NCBI GenBank assembly: GCA_001642005.1 | Contig: LWCA01000037.1 | Coordinates: 7,257-71,256 of the forward strand | Length of the DNA stretch: 64,000 bases | Origin: Intoshia linei | Lineage: Eukaryota; Animalia; Orthonectida | Reading direction: 5' to 3' | Shown here: piece after piece, positions 6,889 to 15,300 of the stretch | How positions within the stretch are numbered: the first letter of the stretch is position 1 | Layout: every line of letters begins with the position of its first letter | Position numbers and translations under genes: made by a program | The notes under the pieces: model-generated | What the model was told of the DNA's origin: nothing | Database searches by the model: none | What the model saw: only the letters and a program-made list of their open reading frames with translations

Positions 6889-7953
6889 ATGTCTATTGCA
6901 TTGACGCGGTTAATCGAAGAAAGAAAGCAATGGCGCAAGCAGAAATTATTTGTAATTTGACCTTTTTTGATTTAACCGTTATTTAGGCATTTGAGGCTAA
7001 ACCTATAACAAAAGATGGAACTTTGAATATGTTTGAATGGAATGCAACCATCCCTGGAAAAACTGGAGTAACTATTTTATTGTGTAATATCCCTAAAGAC
7101 TAAATAGACTAATTGGGAAAAGGGATCTTTCAATTTACGATTGTATTTCAAAGATGATTATCCAACAACGCCCCCTCGATGTAATTTTAAAAAAAGTATA
7201 AATATCCCATCAAAGTATGAATGATATATCTAGATTATAGAAGTTTACAGTATTACAACTAATTGATAATATAGAATATTTAAATTTTTTGAATAGGGCC
7301 AAATTTTCTCAAAGTATGAACAAAATTAGTTCAAATAAGTTTAATTAGTTAAACCCGTCAGATTAAAATTTTTAGATATTGTTAATGATTATAATTTTTT
7401 CGTGTTGGGTGGTATTAATCTTTATTTGGACCTACAGTTGTGACAATTTTTAATAAATAAATCTTAATCAAGATTAGTAAAACTTTGATTTTATTTTTAA
7501 TATTTTAGGTAAATTTGAACCGACTATTTTCCATCCCAATATTTATCCATCAGGAACTGTTTGTTTGTCACTGTTAGATGAGGATAAAGACTGGAAACCA
7601 TCCGTTTCAATCAAACAAGTAATTAATTTTTTTGGGTATCATTTGGAATTTTAAAAATTAGAAAATATATATTATGACATTTGAAGTTGCAAAAACTGTA
7701 TAAACTCCATTTAACAGTGATCGTACTAAAGTTATGATAGTGGTAGTTCAAAATAATGAAATTTTTTAGATTTTAACTGGCATTCAAAAATTATTAAATG
7801 AACCAAACATTAAAGATCCTGCACAAGCTGATGCATACACTGTATATTGGTATTTTTAAAAAAAATTTAAAATATTTTAAATTTAGTAATAACCGCGAGG
7901 AATATGATAAACGAATACGCGAACAAGCAGAACGATTTCATAAAAATTATTAA
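6889..7953 (+). CDS. UBE2I: SUMO E2 conjugating enzyme Ubc9 (6 exons)
   Basis: Spliced: [27 protein letters not shown]|[18 protein letters not shown]|[36 protein letters not shown]|[24 protein letters not shown]|[17 protein letters not shown]. Mini-introns at 6952-6986, 7068-7107 and 7850-7886. Confidence 0.95.
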
Positions 7954-10854
7954 ATTTTATTTCATTATTTATACATTTTATCATATCTTGCATCAACGGT
8001 GCATCTGGTGTAATACATGTTAAATTAAATGATTTTAAATAATTTGCAGTTTGTTTTCCCATACAAATATATCTCACCTTGTTGGCAAAAAAACTTTCTA
8101 TTTTGGAACCTAGATTATTTTATAAAAAAATCAATATGTATTAGTAAGTGACTATTTTCAATGTATATGATACGGTTCTTTCTGGAATTTCGAAGGGGTC
8201 TCAGGTCATTAAATTTTACTTTAATTGCTTTATAAATTGTCTGTAATCATTTTTTCATCATCTTAAATCTGGTTGGAAAGCTGAATAAATGGTTACCGCC
8301 CCTGCATTGAAGGAAAAATGCACTGTAGATTAAATTTAACCTAATACTAATGGAATAAAACAGTTATTTATATTTAAATATCGATGATATTCTTACTAAT
8401 CTAACATTGATTATTTACAAACTGAACCAGAGGTGGGGATGCATTTACTGTCCGAAGGCCGCAATAACGTCCAAAAACATTTTAATAAGGTCGCACCTTT
8501 CTCAATAAAATTTAATCAAATACAGCAGTGCTTCTCATTGGGGTGAATGATAAAATTTTAGCATATTTTATTTAATTTAGTAAAATCTTATGAGAAAAAG
8601 CCAAAATTTTATCGACCCTTAAGGAAATAATCCCTTTACCAAACTTTTAAATCAAAAACTCCTCTATCTGATTCCAAAAGCAAAAGCCTAATTTTACCAA
8701 CACTTTAGGAAAAAATGGCTTTTACCAATATTTTTCTGATAATCCCATTTTATAAAAAATTAATATTTTGAATGATAAATAAAATAATTCAAATTGTTCA
8801 GAAGGTCCCACCTCTAAACTAAACTATATTGTTAACCATTTTTGTCTAGTGAATGAATATTTAATATTCAACAATTTTTTATAATACACGATAAAAAATT
8901 ATAAGGACCCTGACTTGAATAAAATTATACTTACCAAATATAAGTAGTTAAAATAAATTTATAAAATTGAATTTTGACTTGGTAAATTAAATTATAAAAG
9001 TAAACTGTATTTACATTTATATAAGTTAGATATATCATTCAATACTACCAATGCATAGCGAATTATACATTGAAAATAATGGCCTTAATAATAATAATAT
9101 TAATAAATAATAACATGTATAAACTACAAAAGCTAATTTTACGTAAAATTAGGTTATCGTGTCATTAAAAAATAAACCAATTTGATTAATAATAACGTTG
9201 AAAACAGATTCGACGCCAGAAGGACTGAAAAATGCAACAACATGAGCATTTCGCTAAAAATGTAAATGTATACGTGAATTAAAAATAGTACCACACCCGG
9301 TTGATGAATTAATGTTTGCAATTGTGAATTAGGAATAGTATTGTAGACATAAAAACTTTTATATTCAATTTCTAAAATATAAAATAAATTATGCGATAAT
9401 AACCTTATTTAAAATCAAGGATACAAATCAACATAGGAACGATTTGTCAATAAAATTTTATAAAACAATTGAATGGGATTGCAAGATTTGCTATTTGGAA
9501 AGAAAAAGCAAAATGATATTAAAAAATCAATCCAAAACCTCGATCTCCAATTAACCACCAATCAAAAACGCATAGATGACTGCAACACCAAATTCGAAGC
9601 TTGTACAAAGAGAGCCCTAGAATTTAAGAAAAAAGGGAAAACGAATGGTAAACCTAATCGACCCGAATATACTAATTTTAGATGCTATGCGTGTTTTAAA
9701 GCAGCGAAAGCGTATAAGTGAACAAATTAAAAAATTGGATAATCAAATAGCTAATTTGGACAATTTAAAATTTGATCTAATTGAAGTTCAAACGCAAAAA
9801 GAACATATAAAATCGGTGAAAGAAGCTTCCGATGCAATTAAAAGTGAAATGAAAAATATGTTTGATATTTTTAATCGTTTTAATGTATCATGTTTATAGT
9901 ACCATTGATAAAGTTAGTGATACTCAAGATGATTTGAATGCAATCAGGGACGATCTTAATGATATGAACAACATTCTGGCAGATAATGCTGAAATGAGAG
10001 ACAGCGAGATTGGCTTGGAGGCATATTGTATTTTGACATTGTAAATTGATTTTAGGACCTTGAAAATGAATTTATGAACCTTGAAAATGAAATACAAGCA
10101 GATGAACTCAGTCCTATTAAAGAAGAAACAGACACTAAAGACATTGATAAGGATATAGAACTCATTCTGAACGATTTAGAAGACGTGCCAACTGATAAAG
10201 TTAAAAAAGAAACTGGTTCAAATTTAAATATTTTTAATTACTAGTTATTTAGAAACAGATTTCCGTGATAACCTCGAAAAATGGCTTACGTGACAAAATG
10301 AAAATGTAGCATTAAATGTTTATATTAAGACCTTTTTCTTGGAAATATTTATCAATAATGTCCAAAGAACGAACTCCTCGAATATATATCAATATTCTTT
10401 CTTCTAATATAATAAAAATTTGTACAGAAATAATAAAATACCATTTTCGAATAATTCTATCAAATTATCAGCGCTATTAGCTATAATTCGACTGGAAAAC
10501 GGGGCAAAACTTTGCACTAAGAAAATATTGTATATGACTACGACTGAACGCTTACCAAATTTTGCAATTTGTCTTCCAACAATATAAAATTTTGCATCAT
10601 TTAATCCAAAATTTTCTAATCTCTTGGCAGCATATTTGCTGGTTAATATAATGGTCAAATTATTATTTTCCCGCAGCAAATTGAGCAATTCATTGCTAAA
10701 GGTAAATTGAATAATATGAATCGGTTCAATAAATAAAACGTCCGCATCTTTTGAAATTGTCTTTGAAATTTATATTTTTATGTCAAAAATCACATACATT
10801 TTCATAAATATTGTTTGAATCTGAATGCGTTTTGAAAAGTATCACTTTTTTCAT
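7883..10854 (-). CDS. UROS: Uroporphyrinogen-III synthase (HemD), 7 exons
   Basis: Spliced: MKKVILFKTHSDSNNIYEN|..IEPIHIIQFTF..IILTSKYAA..FYIVGRQIA|..NSADNLIELF|..LIYIRGVRSLDII..QEK|EIEYKSFYVYNTIP|..VAFFSPSGVESV|..RYICMGKQTANYL..PDAP. This matches the UROS motif order (IFTS, VVG, VYQT, FFSPSG, AIGPTTA). All junctions are GT-AG and in frame. Confidence 0.85.
9473..10293 (+). CDS. CHMP4: ESCRT-III Snf7/CHMP4 (Vps32) family protein, nested antisense in a UROS intron
   Basis: MGLQDLLFGKKK..AMRVLKQRKRISEQIKKLDNQIANL.. with acidic C-terminus DLENEFMNLE..LEKWLT*. Four mini-introns. Confidence 0.85.
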
Positions 10855-10999
10855 TATTATAATTAATTGGTAACCAATTTTATCATTGTCACTAGTGTAC
10901 TAATTTAAATTATGTGAAAATAACTTTATAAGTTATTTGTAAATATTTGGTTTGTTTTTGTAAATGATATCTGTACAAATTAAAAGTATTACATAAGAA

Positions 11000-12273
11000 A
11001 TGGTATGATTCTACTGTAAATTGACATTCTAATGTTATATAGGCATATCATTCGACATTTACAAATAATAATTATAAGGTTATTGGCGATACAGCCTTAC
11101 TACCTTTACGTACAAAAATTAGAGGACCAGCTGTTAAAACAAGTTTATCTATTTGATACTTTTTATATTTTTCAGACGAAAATTACGATATCATTGATGA
11201 AGTTTTATTATTTTTTAAAGCCAATATCCTCTTTAAAAGTTTCACTATCCAGGTAGAATCGGTCATTTTTATTTTGTATGTCTTTTTAGTCTGAAGCTGA
11301 TCGTACCTTAATTTACATTACTCTTTATATTACAGAAGTTTTGAAAAAAGCAGTCAAGGTACACTATTAATTCATCAATGGTCACGTTAAGACTTGTCTT
11401 AAGAGTCAAGATAACAATACCTGTAAAAAGTTGATTGTTGACAAGTTTAACGAACAAACGTTGATTTAGAAATTTTTAATAAATTTTATTGATCAATCAC
11501 TTATTTTACTAAATTGACATTTTATAAAAAAGTACTAACTGTACTGTACTTGAATAATTTATTTTTACTAAAAAATAAAAATGATTTATTCATAGTATTC
11601 CATTTAAAATGTTTTGTAATGAGAATAATGAATAAGGTACGAGAAACAATTCAAAAACAACATAAAAATAAATTTTTTTATTTTTCATTCTAATTAAAAA
11701 TTCCGTTAGCGTTAACGGGATTAAAGTGTATTAAAATTACGCTGATTTGGTTATAAGTGAATTTATGATTTAAAATCAAAAAAATTAGTCATGTCAGTTT
11801 AGAATAGTCAATTTCATACAAATTTTTTTTGAGAATTTGTGAGAATCATTATAATGTACTTATATGTATTGATAATTTAGTGCCAAAATAAAAACAACAC
11901 TGTAAAAGAACTGCATTCTATGAGTATTGAAAAATTTTCTATACCTGGAGATCAATCATTTCCTCTTAAAGGTTTATATGCCTCTCCAGCAAACCGAAAC
12001 GAAGAAGGTTTTTAACTGTTATGAAATATTTTATAGATTTTAAATTTTTATTAAATTATTTGTAATTTGAGTTTTATTAGCAGAAATACGAGGATACCTA
12101 ACCCAAGTGCGACAGGAAGTAAACGAAAGATTGTCAACCATTTTGTTCAAGGATTCTGATAAAAAACCTTCAAAAGTTTCATTTTTAAACGTGTAATTTA
12201 AATTTTTTAGTGGTGGACCTGTTTCGTAAAAAGAAAATTTATGGATAAAAGTCTATCTAAAGCTGGACAATGA
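11000..12273 (+). CDS. ARPC3: Arp2/3 complex subunit 3 (p21-Arc)
   Basis: M|AYHSTF..GDTALLPLRTKIRGPA..DIIDEVLLFFKANI..EADRTLIYITLYI..FSIPGDQSFPL..RGYLTQVRQE..KPSK|WWTCFVKRKFMDKSLSKAGQ*. Confidence 0.95.
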
Positions 12274-12321: not shown

Positions 12322-15300
12322 TTATTCAGTTACATCTTCTAAATCTTTTTCTTTTATTCTAAATACATGCAGAAGAATGTAGATAATCGATGCGAAAGCA
12401 TATGAAACACCAACCATGATAAACATGTCGAAATATCTTCCAGTTGTCCTTATTATTTGAGCTAAATATACTTTTAGTTGTAATAATTTCATTTTTGTTT
12501 TATTTTATTATGAGAATATTTTTAAACCCAACCATTTTTACTAAAAATCCACTTTTATCAACCCTTAAGCGAAATTCCACTTTTACAAACTCTTTAGGGA
12601 AAATTCCGATTTTACAAATCCATTAGAGAAAAATCGAGTTTCACCAATCCTAAGGGAAAAATGTAGTCTTATTAACCCTAAAATGAAAAAATCAGTTTTA
12701 CCAACCCTTAAGACAGTGCTTTTCAACTATTTTTGGTTGGCAACACATATTTCAATCTCAAAAAATTTCGCGACACATCAATCAAAAAAATACACGATTG
12801 ATTAATAAATATAATTGAACCAATTTTTTTCTAATAATCTAAAAATAAGCTATGTAAAATTTATCATCGTCACTAAAAATATCTTTGATTTGCATTTTTA
12901 TGTCTTCCAATTGTATTGTCTGCTAATGAAATTTAAATAAAATTTTAAGTTTGGCGATACACAAAAGTTTCACGATACACTGGTTGGAAAGCACTGCCTT
13001 AAGGGATTAATTCACCTTTACAAACCCTAAAACTTGAAATTTTTCCTGAAGGTTTGGTAACACTAATGGTTTAATTTCAGTCTTGTAAAACTGAATTTTT
13101 CCCTTAAGATTTGGTAAAACAGGAATTTTCCCAAAAGGGTTGGTAAATTTTGATTTTCAGTAAAAATGATTAGATTTAAGTAAAAAATGGTTGGATTTAA
13201 GTAGACACCCTTTTATTACAGTGCTCGTTCTCCAAAGTGACCACTTTTGATGAACGAAGGATCGTGGAGAGTCAACAGTGGGTCCGTTGTAGATCAAAGT
13301 GATAGGCCCTATATACAAACTAAAAAAATATATATCCATGGTTTAACTATTTCTTCAGTGCTACACGGCTGGAGTAACAAAATTACACCAACACTTAAGT
13401 AAAAAATCCACTTAATAATATTATTTTTTTGAAATTTGTTCCTTCATTGCTTCGAAATATTTTTTATTGCTACGCAATTTTTCAATCTCAAAAATCTCAT
13501 TTTTAAAACATTTTGTTTATAACTTAAATTAAAACTACAACTTTGTCATTATCATTTTTATATTTATTACAATCCTTTGCAATATTGGTAAATTCACGTG
13601 AAATATGTTTATAAAGTGCTGATTCCGTTAATTATTGATACATAATTGGTATTTTTAAGTATTTATTAAATTGGTACAGAATATATATTATCACTTTGAA
13701 AATGACAAAATAGGATTTTATAATTTTATGTTTTCTGGAATTTATGCTATTTATGACAATTTTTAGGATCGGACTGTTTTTACTTTATTTTTAATAATAT
13801 ACACACATTCTGTCTAAAAATTAAAAAAATGGGATAACAATTGTTTGTAAAATTCTTTATACAAATGTTAACAAAATTAAGATGGAATAATTCAATTTAA
13901 AGTAAAAAGTAATATGATATGACAATTTCACCTGAAACAAGTTTGAGAACCACTCCTTTAAAGGATTGATAATAGTAAATAGTAGAATTTTAAGTTAGAT
14001 TTTCAACGTGTATTTATTTTTTTGGTATATTAAAAATGTGCCCTCGGCAGAGCTAGGTGCTGTTTGTACGTAGTACAATGTACTATATATAATTACTTGA
14101 ACAAAAAAATAATATTTTCAAATTTTACGTACTACAATCAAAATAAATTTTTTATTGGTCAAAATAGTCCACATGAACCACTTTGGCAACCCTTTTTTTA
14201 ATATATTCTGAATATCACGAAAAAAATAAGCAGGTTTATTCAATTGGACACAAAAAATGACAAGTTTCATTATTACATAATCAATACCAATTTATTTAAA
14301 CTGATGATTAATATTGATTTTTCGGTTTTTCTGATATTAATATTTCAACTAATGTATTAATTTACCGGCTATTTGAGGACCAATAGCTAAACCAATACCC
14401 ATACCGAACCGATAAATGACAAATAAATGTTTTATTTTGCGAGTGTTCATTATCTCTTCACAAGATACATACATTCCTGCAATTATTGGACCGCCGAATA
14501 ATCCTTGACCTATGTGAAACATGTACATTTTAATTTTGAATGCTTTTAACAAATTACCGATAACATAAAGATACATTTCAAATAATTGATTTGAAAACCC
14601 TCCTCCAATAGATATTAAAAAAAGAGATAATGCACAACCACCATAGATTATTAAAAACTTTCCTTCCAAAAATCGACCAATTGCTGATGTTAATAATCGA
14701 CTTGTTGCTTCTGATACACCATATATTGTTACTACTTGGACAGCATCAACAAGATGTATATTTTTTGATAACATGTATCGTATCTAAATTTTCACAGTAC
14801 AATTCAATAATAATTATAATTATTGGGCTAATTTTTTTTAGATAAAAAAACTGATAATGGTAAAATGTGATTTTTAAATACCCAATTTTGTAGCATATAC
14901 TAAAGAATATGGTCCCATGAGAAGAGTCGCACCTAACATGCACAAAATCCCTCTTTGGAGGCCAAATTGAGAATTTATAAAATTTCCATTTTTCATACAC
15001 TAGTCATGGCTCAACTGCTGTGGAAAGGTGGTTAGAGGCTATATGGAATAACGAATCTCTCGTCAAATTTTTAGGGACCTATTATTACATATTGATATCT
15101 CATAAGAGAGTATCGTAGATTCGGCTCCACCCGTTAACCGGGCCATGTGGATTCTGTTTATATGTAATCAAAATACAATGTATGACTTTATTTACTTACA
15201 TAAATTACCATATTAAATGTTTCCGACTTTTTTGACATACATTTTAGTATAACTAATAATTTTACATTTTTTTTGTTTTATCAGCTTATTTGTATTACAT

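What the first reader, a model, noticed from the sequence alone, without database searches (positions are those of the whole stretch)
7883..10854. Hidden UROS gene carries the whole CHMP4 gene antisense inside one intron
Seen in sequence: UROS exon 4 ends at 10332 (..QEK G|GTCTT). The next exon starts at 9371 (TTTTAG|AA ATT GAA) and continues in frame into VYNT and FFSPSG. The 960-bp intron (9372-10331) contains the complete five-exon CHMP4 gene (9473-10293, +) with only ~100 bp upstream and ~40 bp downstream. Inference: the CHMP4 promoter and 3' end must sit on or overlap UROS exons. Nesting two unrelated housekeeping genes (heme synthesis and ESCRT-III) implies a relocation during genome compaction. 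No N gap lies in this region.
Basis: partly seen in the sequence, partly recalled or inferred. Interest (0 to 1): 0.8.

Follow-up and report, generated by a model that had tools for sequence, protein, structure and literature searches.

The report
ESCRT gene nested inside heme-enzyme intron
In the tiny parasitic worm Intoshia linei, the gene for a heme-making enzyme (uroporphyrinogen-III synthase) has a 960-base intron that holds a whole membrane-remodelling gene (Snf7/CHMP4-like) on the opposite strand; this is a real but ordinary kind of gene nesting, and it shows that the public gene model of the enzyme is cut in half.

Summary
The window is Intoshia linei. On the minus strand a 7-exon, all GT-AG, 262-codon uroporphyrinogen-III synthase (UROS) gene runs from 10854 to 7883. 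Its intron 4 (10331-9372, 960 nt) contains a complete plus-strand 5-exon Snf7-family gene (9473-10293).

- **Public model:** GenBank's A3Q56_00580 (142 aa) is exons 1-4 plus a read-through into that intron. It matches Pfam HEM4 positions 12-141.
- **Downstream exons:** exons 6 and 7, beyond the guest gene, match positions 168-188 and 193-230. Exon 5 fills the 26-position gap and supplies the family's invariant tyrosine.
- **Genome context:** this is the only HEM4 locus in the genome. ALAD, HMBS, UROD and ferrochelatase genes are present elsewhere.
- **Guest gene:** it needs one GC-AG intron to stay open.

The N-terminal half is not hidden, since it is annotated and UniRef names it UROS. Overlap of the guest's promoter or 3' end with host exons is plausible but untested. 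"Relocation during genome compaction" has no support. Both long introns are expansions (one holds the gene, the other a MITE-like repeat), and 3.4 kb of ORF-poor, repeat-bearing DNA lies next door.

Nested antisense genes are well known in animals. No RNA evidence was reachable, and the joined spliced protein was not searched.

The parts
10798..10854 (-). UROS exon 1 (ATG at 10854; 19 codons)
   Evidence: Reading. Identical to the start of GenBank protein A3Q56_00580 = P0001.
10556..10760 (-). UROS exon 2
   Evidence: Part of P0001. In the ESM Atlas, all 30 named nearest clusters carry HEM4. BLAST to a Rickettsiaceae UROS gives E 1.8e-5.
10442..10516 (-). UROS exon 3
   Evidence: Part of P0001. 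GT-AG, flanked by 39- and 38-nt introns.
10332..10403 (-). UROS exon 4 (last exon before the guest gene; ends in phase 1)
   Evidence: Part of P0001, whose HEM4 match ends at profile position 141. The GenBank model then reads six codons into the intron and stops.
9372..10331 (-). UROS intron 4, 960 nt, holding the guest gene
   Evidence: gt...ag borders. Single copy in the genome. No flanking direct or inverted repeats of note.
9473..9647 (+). Snf7/CHMP4-like exon 1 (ATG 9473)
   Evidence: Reading. No family match on its own.
9682..9859 (+). Snf7/CHMP4-like exon 2
   Evidence: Pfam Snf7 32.5 bits, above the 27.3 cut-off, profile 43-100. Best solved relative is Drosophila Shrub 5J45.
9900..10020 (+). 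Snf7/CHMP4-like exon 3, ending at a GC donor (gag|gcatat)
   Evidence: Only this donor keeps the frame. The GT at 10028 gives a TGA.
10056..10215 (+). Snf7/CHMP4-like exon 4 (acidic C-terminal region)
   Evidence: Open frame and splice phases.
10253..10293 (+). Snf7/CHMP4-like exon 5 with L-E-K-W near the end; TGA stop at 10291-10293
   Evidence: Reading.
10311..10316 (+). ATTAAA, candidate poly(A) signal of the guest gene, 16 nt before host exon 4
   Evidence: Reading only. Such hexamers are common in 27% G+C DNA.
9295..9371 (-). UROS exon 5 (carries V-Y-N-T with the family's invariant Tyr)
   Evidence: Needed to keep the frame between exons 4 and 6. MAFFT places it in columns 202-229, with its Tyr on the 100%-conserved Tyr column; 2 of 200 shuffles land in that slot. 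No HMM or BLAST support on its own.
9178..9253 (-). UROS exon 6 (F-F-S-P-S-G)
   Evidence: Pfam HEM4 14.0 bits, profile 168-188. Third-best of 3454 window fragments against my own HemD profile.
8110..9177 (-). UROS intron 6, 1068 nt
   Evidence: Phase-1 donor at 9178 and phase-1 acceptor at 8109. A second phase-1 acceptor 12 nt downstream is equally possible (reading).
8409..8812 (.). MITE-like dispersed repeat inside intron 6
   Evidence: At least 430 first-look candidates in the genome, 71-88% identical copies. Shared ends of the type CAGAGGTGGGGA... / ...CCCAC.
7883..8109 (-). UROS exon 7 (TAA stop at 7885-7883)
   Evidence: Pfam HEM4 18.6 bits, profile 193-230 of 231. The only HEM4 candidate in a six-frame scan of the whole genome.
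7887..7953 (+). Last exon of the convergent UBC9-like gene, wholly covered by the tail of UROS exon 7 on the other strand
   Evidence: Reading. The preceding exon matches Pfam UQ_con at E 3e-4.

Best explanation
This is a host-guest (nested) gene pair in the nuclear genome of the orthonectid Intoshia linei.

The host is the animal's single uroporphyrinogen-III synthase gene. It has seven exons on the minus strand (10854-7883) and 262 codons.

The guest is a complete Snf7-family ESCRT-III gene, most likely the CHMP4/Shrub orthologue. It has five exons on the plus strand (9473-10293) and 224 codons, and it lies entirely inside host intron 4.

Inferred mechanism: RNA polymerase II reads the host through the guest on the opposite strand, and the spliceosome removes the 960-nt intron, joining 10332 to 9371. 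The guest is transcribed from its own promoter. That promoter sits in, or just beyond, the 101 nt that separate the guest from host exon 5. The guest transcript ends near an ATTAAA 18 nt after its stop codon, at or just inside host exon 4. The two transcripts therefore probably overlap antisense by a few to some tens of bases.

The public 142-residue model (A3Q56_00580) is a prediction artefact that stops in the intron. It is not a real half-enzyme.

Shown: the coordinates, open frames and splice signals; family membership of the two halves of the host; Snf7 membership of the guest; uniqueness of the host locus.

Inferred: that both halves are on one mRNA, where the guest's transcript ends, and how the arrangement arose.
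For: - **Organism and public model:** one search returns A3Q56_00580 [Intoshia linei], which UniRef names UROS. Its sequence equals exons 1-4 plus six intron codons.
- **Complementary collinear HEM4 matches:** P0001 scores 23.4 bits (E 3.8e-5) on profile 12-141. Exon 6 scores 14.0 bits on 168-188 and exon 7 scores 18.6 bits on 193-230. The 26 missing positions equal the 26 residues of exon 5.
- **Exon 5 placement:** MAFFT fragment placement puts exons 1-6 in order without overlap. Exon 5's Tyr and exon 6's Ser fall on columns that are 100% conserved in 25 HemD sequences. Shuffles reach those slots in 1% and 3.5% of trials.
- **Window-wide ranking:** against my own HemD profile, the three best of 3454 six-frame fragments of the 64-kb window are exon 7, exons 2/3 and exon 6.
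- **Fold:** the AlphaFold model of P0001 (pLDDT 84.5) has UROS structures as its 11 best PDB matches. They cover about half of each target.
- **Frame logic:** seven exons, all GT-AG, 789 nt, no internal stop. Exon 4 joined straight to exon 6 would shift the frame.
- **No separate start for the second half:** exons 5-6 have no in-frame ATG and exon 5 starts in phase 1.
- **Need for the gene:** this is the only HEM4 locus in 41.6 Mb. UROD, HMBS, ALAD and ferrochelatase are present.
- **Guest:** exon 2 alone passes the Pfam Snf7 cut-off. The 224-codon frame is open with one GC-AG intron. The intron content is single copy.
Against: - No transcript evidence of any kind was reachable.
- No single piece of the host reaches Pfam's 27.5-bit cut-off. 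The joined protein was deliberately not searched.
- Exon 5 has no family signal of its own.
- The fold model was built on an alignment of HemD sequences, so its UROS-like fold is not fully independent evidence.
- The host exon-4 donor (AAG|gtctta) and exon-6 donor (TTG|gtttat) are weak-looking.
- The guest needs a non-GT donor.
- The public annotators' pipeline ended the gene in intron 4. That could in principle reflect real premature termination.
Confidence: 0.8

Rival explanations
1. UROS is a dead or dying gene. Arrival of the Snf7 gene (and of the repeat in intron 6) broke it. Only the 142-residue stub, or nothing, is made, and the downstream exons are relics.
For: The GenBank model stops in intron 4. 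The two long introns are about 17 times the published median of 57 bp (PMC6543705). The donors at exons 4 and 6 look weak. The protein is so diverged that no piece passes the Pfam cut-off.
Against: Exons 5-7 keep 126 codons open in DNA where about 8.5% of random codons are stops, so the chance expectation is about 1e-5. All splice signals and phases are intact. The family's invariant Tyr and Ser are kept. This is the only HEM4 locus, while four other heme-pathway genes are retained.
Confidence: 0.08
2. The enzyme is split. The N-terminal half (exons 1-4) and the C-terminal half (exons 5-7) are two separate genes flanking the Snf7 gene, and their products assemble. In that case nothing is nested.
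For: The annotated stand-alone N-terminal product exists in GenBank. The break falls at a domain-crossing region of a two-domain fold (one search shows the N-half covering about half of UROS structures).
Against: Exon 5 begins in phase 1. There is no in-frame ATG between the upstream stop and the end of exon 6. The first Met of the C-terminal part lies inside exon 7, after the F-F-S-P-S-G strand. Exon 5 has a proper acceptor with a pyrimidine tract and fits the phase of exon 4 exactly.
Confidence: 0.04
3. Assembly artefact: the Snf7 segment was placed inside UROS by a mis-join, and the two genes are not nested in the animal.
For: The assembly is a draft in 3520 contigs.
Against: There is no N within 13 kb. 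The 960 nt are single copy, with no repeat at either border that could seed a mis-join. Both borders are clean splice sites of the host. Two mis-joins exactly at an exon-intron boundary pair would be needed.
Confidence: 0.03

Closest known systems
Nested (intronic) protein-coding genes of animals, e.g. Drosophila 2mit inside an intron of timeless2 on the opposite strand
   Same: A complete protein-coding gene with its own introns lies inside one intron of an unrelated host gene, in the opposite orientation. In D. melanogaster, intronic genes make up about 6% of genes and about 85% of them code for proteins (PMC3786989, abstract). Host-guest transcriptional interference has been described (PMC3192792).
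   Different: The host intron here is very small (960 nt) and the guest fills 86% of it, leaving 101 and 38 nt of spacer. The guest's control regions therefore probably touch host exons. Both partners are single-copy housekeeping genes. The organism is an orthonectid, for which I found no description of nested genes in the papers searched.
Uroporphyrinogen-III synthase (HemD/UROS, Pfam HEM4 PF02602; structures 1JR2, 3RE1, 1WD7)
   Same: Collinear matches to nearly the whole HEM4 profile. UROS fold for the N-terminal half. The invariant Tyr and Ser are present. Length is 262 residues.
   Different: It is very diverged. Each piece is below the Pfam cut-off. The only relative found in 1.84 billion representatives is a Rickettsiaceae UROS at 31-33% identity. 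About 30 residues beyond the domain's end are encoded antisense to the last exon of a UBC9-like gene.
CHMP4 / Shrub / Snf7 (ESCRT-III, Pfam Snf7 PF03357)
   Same: Exon 2 passes the Snf7 cut-off at profile 43-100. The best solved relative is Drosophila Shrub. It has an acidic C-terminal region, and an L-x-x-W near the C-terminus like the ALIX-binding helix of CHMP4 (my own knowledge; read at 10253-10293).
   Different: Subfamily is not proven: the Shrub match has E 0.029, and exons 1, 3 and 4 match nothing on their own. The N-terminus (M-G...L-F-G-K-K-K-Q) also recalls CHMP6. One intron needs a GC donor.

Membership tests
HEM4 / uroporphyrinogen-III synthase | Pfam HEM4 score of the whole protein above the gathering cut-off (27.5 bits) | tested here: inconclusive
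Only pieces were searched: 23.4 bits (exons 1-4 as P0001), 14.0 (exon 6) and 18.6 (exon 7). Each is below the cut-off; their plain sum is 56 bits.
HEM4 / uroporphyrinogen-III synthase | Collinear coverage of the whole domain by one reading frame on one strand | tested here: met
   Profile 12-141, then 168-188, then 193-230 in genomic order on the minus strand. Exon 5 (26 residues) fits the 26-position gap and MAFFT places it there. The 789-nt frame has no stop.
HEM4 / uroporphyrinogen-III synthase | HemD-like fold | tested here: met
   N-terminal half only. The model has pLDDT 84.5, and its 11 best PDB matches are all UROS, E 3e-5 to 5e-3. Caveat: the model used a HemD alignment. The C-terminal half was not folded.
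HEM4 / uroporphyrinogen-III synthase | Conserved Tyr (A-Y-R region) and Ser (F-F-S region) of the family | tested here: met
   Exon 5 Tyr falls on column 210 and exon 6 Ser on column 241. Both columns are 100% conserved in 25 bacterial HemD rows.
HEM4 / uroporphyrinogen-III synthase | Converts hydroxymethylbilane to uroporphyrinogen III | not testable with these tools
   Context only: sole HEM4 locus, and ALAD, HMBS, UROD and ferrochelatase are present.
Snf7 / ESCRT-III | Pfam Snf7 above the gathering cut-off (27.3 bits) | tested here: met
   Exon 2 alone: 32.5 bits, E 8e-8, profile 43-100; 33.8 bits in the genome scan.
CHMP4 subfamily of Snf7 | Closer to CHMP4/Shrub/Snf7 than to CHMP1-3, 5-7; C-terminal Bro1/ALIX-binding helix | tested here: inconclusive
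   The best solved relative of exon 2 is Shrub, E 0.029. L-E-K-W near the C-terminus was read from the sequence. The other Snf7 loci of the genome look like CHMP2 and another subfamily by eye. No tree was made.
Nested (intronic) gene pair | Whole coding region of the guest lies between two consecutive exons of the host | tested here: met
   Guest at 9473-10293; host exons end at 10332 and start at 9371.
Nested (intronic) gene pair | Host exons on both sides are joined in one mRNA; guest has its own transcript | not testable with these tools
   No RNA data could be reached.

The most novel reading that the evidence does not exclude
The guest fills 86% of a 960-nt intron. Its promoter and poly(A) site would then lie on host exons 5/6 and 4, so two single-copy housekeeping mRNAs (heme synthesis and ESCRT-III) would be obligatorily antisense-paired at both ends of the guest, with each constraining the other's coding sequence and expression. 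Together with the antisense coding overlap of UROS with UBC9 at its 3' end, and other nested pairs flagged in this genome by first-stage readers, gene-in-intron packing would be a recurrent feature of orthonectid genome architecture rather than a one-off.
Probability: 0.2. Interest if true: 0.45.

Novelty: new member of a known kind. Interest (0 to 1): 0.27.

Why it matters
- **Annotation:** it corrects a public gene model. I. linei's only UROS is annotated as a 142-residue 'hypothetical protein' that would be half an enzyme. That could mislead any survey of heme synthesis in this reduced parasite. With the full 7-exon model, five of the pathway's steps (ALAD, HMBS, UROS, UROD and ferrochelatase) have a gene in this genome; ALAS, CPOX and PPOX were not searched.
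- **Gene finders:** it is a clean, very tight example of an antisense nested pair in a short-intron genome (published median 57 bp). Gene finders that cap intron length will systematically split such hosts.
- **Limits:** the phenomenon itself (a gene inside an intron of another gene) is textbook. It opens no long-standing question.

Tried and rejected
- **Single exon pieces against PDB sequences**. There were no UROS hits. The chance matches (uL23, chemokines, DDM1) were rejected because they are short, weak and out of context.
- **NCBIfam on the pieces**. Only a 12.6-bit UROS hit for exon 7.
- **Word searches** with the exon 2-3 read-through and with P0001. They found only the GenBank protein itself.
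- **A search with a P0001 + Rickettsiaceae alignment**, aimed at catching a transcript-derived full-length protein. It found only another Rickettsiaceae-like HemD (P0016).
- **The big representative search**. The top hits were WD40 repeat proteins, each matched many times by residues ~80-120, and were rejected as repeat-summed chance similarity. The only true relative was P0014.
- **My own profile of 31 proteobacterial HemD regions**. It ranks exons 7, 2/3 and 6 first in the window but cannot see exons 4 and 5. It also aligns exon 7 to the equivalent motif of the first half (positions 67-99) rather than to the C-terminus.
- **BLAST of pieces against those sequences**. Nothing for exon 5.
- **Smaller checks.** The look-up of encoding contigs does not serve this locus. 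Rfam at E<=1 over 7000-12000 found nothing. Flanking repeats or a second copy of the intron content: none. The genome search 'relatives' is not possible for this eukaryote.
- **Literature.** No paper on nested genes in orthonectids was found.
- **Left out by rule.** joined the exons only inside the script, to count length, phase and stops.
Full report
**What the sequence is.** The window is 27% G+C. It belongs to a 41.6-Mb assembly in 3520 contigs. A word search with an open stretch of the minus strand returned one protein, 'hypothetical protein A3Q56_00580 [Intoshia linei]', which UniRef names uroporphyrinogen-III synthase. The organism is therefore the orthonectid Intoshia linei. Nothing here is human or viral.

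**Checking the observation.** I read 7600-11200 on both strands, made three-frame tables and tabulated the exon borders.

Host exons on the minus strand:

| Exon | Coordinates |
|---|---|
| 1 | 10854-10798 |
| 2 | 10760-10556 |
| 3 | 10516-10442 |
| 4 | 10403-10332 |
| 5 | 9371-9295 |
| 6 | 9253-9178 |
| 7 | 8109-7883 (stop included) |

- All six introns are GT-AG. Their lengths are 37, 39, 38, 960, 41 and 1068 nt.
- The exons add up to 789 nt (262 codons) with no internal stop.

Guest exons on the plus strand: 9473-9647, 9682-9859, 9900-10020, 10056-10215 and 10253-10293.

- The spacers to the host exons are 101 nt (5' side of the guest) and 38 nt (3' side).
- The window's five N letters are all far away.
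- One correction: a GT donor at 10028 would join T to GA and make a stop. Only the GC donor at 10021 (35-nt intron) keeps the 224-codon frame open to the TGA at 10293.

One search joined the exons only inside the script, to count length, phase and stops. The evidence comes from pieces and from the GenBank protein that a tool returned.

1. P0001 (A3Q56_00580, 142 aa) is exactly exons 1-4 followed by six codons read into intron 4 and a stop. It matches Pfam HEM4 at E 3.8e-5 (23.4 bits). Residues 25-139 align with profile positions 12-141 of 231.
2. On the far side of the guest, exon 6 matches HEM4 positions 168-188 (14.0 bits) and exon 7 matches 193-230 (18.6 bits). Exon 7 is also the only HEM4 candidate in a six-frame scan of the whole genome.
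3. The two halves are therefore complementary, collinear and on the same strand. The 26 profile positions missing between them equal the 26 residues of exon 5.
4. Exon 5 gives no family signal alone. MAFFT's fragment placement on an alignment of P0001 and 25 bacterial HemD sequences put it in columns 202-229, between exon 4 (178-200) and exon 6 (232-256). Its tyrosine sits on a column that is Tyr in all 25 references, and exon 6's serine sits on an all-Ser column. Shuffled exon 5 landed in that slot in 2 of 200 trials, and shuffled exon 6 landed in its slot in 7 of 200.
5. Exon 5 is also required by arithmetic. Exon 4 ends in phase 1 and exon 6 starts in phase 0, and joining them directly shifts the frame into an early stop (reading). 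The 77-nt exon 5 restores the frame.
6. Against a profile that I built from 31 proteobacterial HemD regions and two Rickettsiaceae-type proteins, the three best of 3454 six-frame fragments of the whole window were exon 7, exons 2/3 and exon 6. That profile aligned exon 7 to the equivalent motif of the first half of the enzyme, not to the C-terminus.
7. The ESM Atlas put exon 2 next to 30 named clusters, all carrying HEM4.
8. An AlphaFold model of P0001 (pLDDT 84.5) has UROS structures, bacterial and human, as its 11 best PDB matches. They cover about half of each target, as expected for a truncated model. Because the model used a HemD alignment, this is supporting evidence, not independent evidence.

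**Alternatives for the host.**
- *Split enzyme made from two genes.* This is unlikely. Exon 5 starts in phase 1 and there is no in-frame ATG before exon 7.
- *Decaying gene.* This is also unlikely. Exons 5-7 keep 126 codons open in DNA where roughly one random codon in twelve is a stop. The locus is the only HEM4 locus. UROD, HMBS, ALAD and ferrochelatase are all present elsewhere in the genome, so the pathway needs this step.
- *Mis-assembly.* This would need two mis-joins exactly at a splice-site pair, in single-copy DNA without N.

None of these alternatives can be excluded without RNA. No RNA evidence was reachable.

**The guest.** Exon 2 alone passes Pfam's Snf7 cut-off (32.5 against 27.3 bits, profile 43-100). 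Its best solved relative is Drosophila Shrub, the CHMP4 orthologue, but only at E 0.029. Exons 1, 3 and 4 match nothing alone.

From my own knowledge of the family, three features fit CHMP4:
- the I-D-K-V motif at the start of exon 3;
- the acidic exon 4;
- the L-E-K-W near the C-terminus, which resembles CHMP4's ALIX-binding helix.

The M-G...L-F-G-K-K-K-Q start also recalls CHMP6. Two other Snf7 loci in the genome look like other subfamilies by eye. 'Snf7 family' is shown; 'CHMP4' is likely but not proven.

The guest has four introns, so it is not a retrocopy. It is single copy, and no target-site-like or inverted repeats flank it.

**How it probably works.** The host pre-mRNA is transcribed across the guest on the opposite strand, and the 960-nt intron is spliced out. 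The guest has its own promoter and terminator. Only 101 nt lie upstream of its ATG, so the core promoter and 5' UTR must be very short or must extend over host exons 5-6. An ATTAAA lies 18 nt after the stop, at 10311-10316. That predicts cleavage around 10326-10346, at or just inside host exon 4. These points are inference; in DNA this A+T-rich such hexamers are frequent.

'Relocation during genome compaction' is not supported.
- The published median intron of I. linei is 57 bp (PMC6543705), and four of this gene's introns are 37-41 nt. The two long ones are therefore insertions.
- Intron 6 holds a roughly 400-bp dispersed, MITE-like element (about 8409-8812). It has hundreds of related copies and shared termini.
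- Immediately upstream of UROS there are 3.4 kb without any ORF over 74 codons, carrying a repeat with thousands of first-look candidates. Space is not tight at this locus.
- The simplest reading is a DNA-level insertion or rearrangement that put an intron-bearing gene into a pre-existing short intron. When and how this happened cannot be told without related genomes.

**Comparison with what is known.** Protein-coding genes nested in introns, mostly on the opposite strand, are common in animals.
- About 6% of D. melanogaster genes are intronic (PMC3786989).
- Overlaps involve 5-14% of vertebrate genes (PMC2151771).
- Interference between host and guest has been studied (PMC3192792).

This case is a new, unusually tight member of that kind. 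First-stage notes on the same genome flag further nested pairs (s1-784038, s1-780920, s1-784655). I did not test them. If they are right, nesting is recurrent here, which makes this instance less singular. I found no paper describing nested genes in orthonectids, but the held library lacks most subscription journals.

**Verdict.** The practical result is a corrected gene model: the public UROS is half a gene. The biological kind is known, so I score interest at 0.27.

Noticed in passing
window 7883-7953: The last ~23 codons and the stop of UROS exon 7 (minus strand) run antisense through the whole last exon of a convergent UBC9-like gene (7887-7953, plus strand, stop at 7951-7953). The HEM4 domain ends about 30 residues before the UROS stop, so this tail may be a run-on to the first available stop.
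   Followed up: partly
window 10021-10055: The third intron of the Snf7/CHMP4-like gene has to be GC-AG (gag|gcatat...ttttag|gac, 35 nt). The nearby GT at 10028 would create an in-frame TGA at the junction. The alternative is a one-base assembly error.
   Followed up: partly
window ~8409-8812 (inside UROS intron 6); copies e.g. L123, L124, L125: A roughly 400-bp dispersed repeat with shared termini (CAGAGGTGGGGA... at one end, ...CCCAC at the other), 71-88% identical copies and at least 430 first-look candidates in the genome. It looks like a MITE and accounts for much of the 1068-nt intron.
   Followed up: partly
window ~13443-14078: A roughly 635-bp repeat with 83-90% identical copies on many contigs (4078 first-look candidates). 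It lies in a 3.4-kb stretch upstream of UROS that has no ORF over 74 codons.
   Followed up: no
P0001 (UROS exons 1-4) versus P0014: In 1.84 billion representative proteins, the only non-self HEM4 relative at E<=1e-3 is a UROS from a Rickettsiaceae MAG (31-33% identity over residues 1-123). No animal UROS made the list. Shared A+T-driven amino-acid composition is the likely cause. A bacterial origin of this intron-bearing gene was not tested.
   Followed up: no
window 8097-8109: Two phase-compatible acceptors for UROS exon 7 lie 12 nt apart (ctag|GT at 8109 and atag|AA at 8097). Either keeps the frame, and they differ by four residues.
   Followed up: no
G000 contigs C1714 and C3393: Ferrochelatase (PF00762) matches fall on two different contigs with overlapping profile ranges. 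This suggests two ferrochelatase genes or two haplotype contigs.
   Followed up: no
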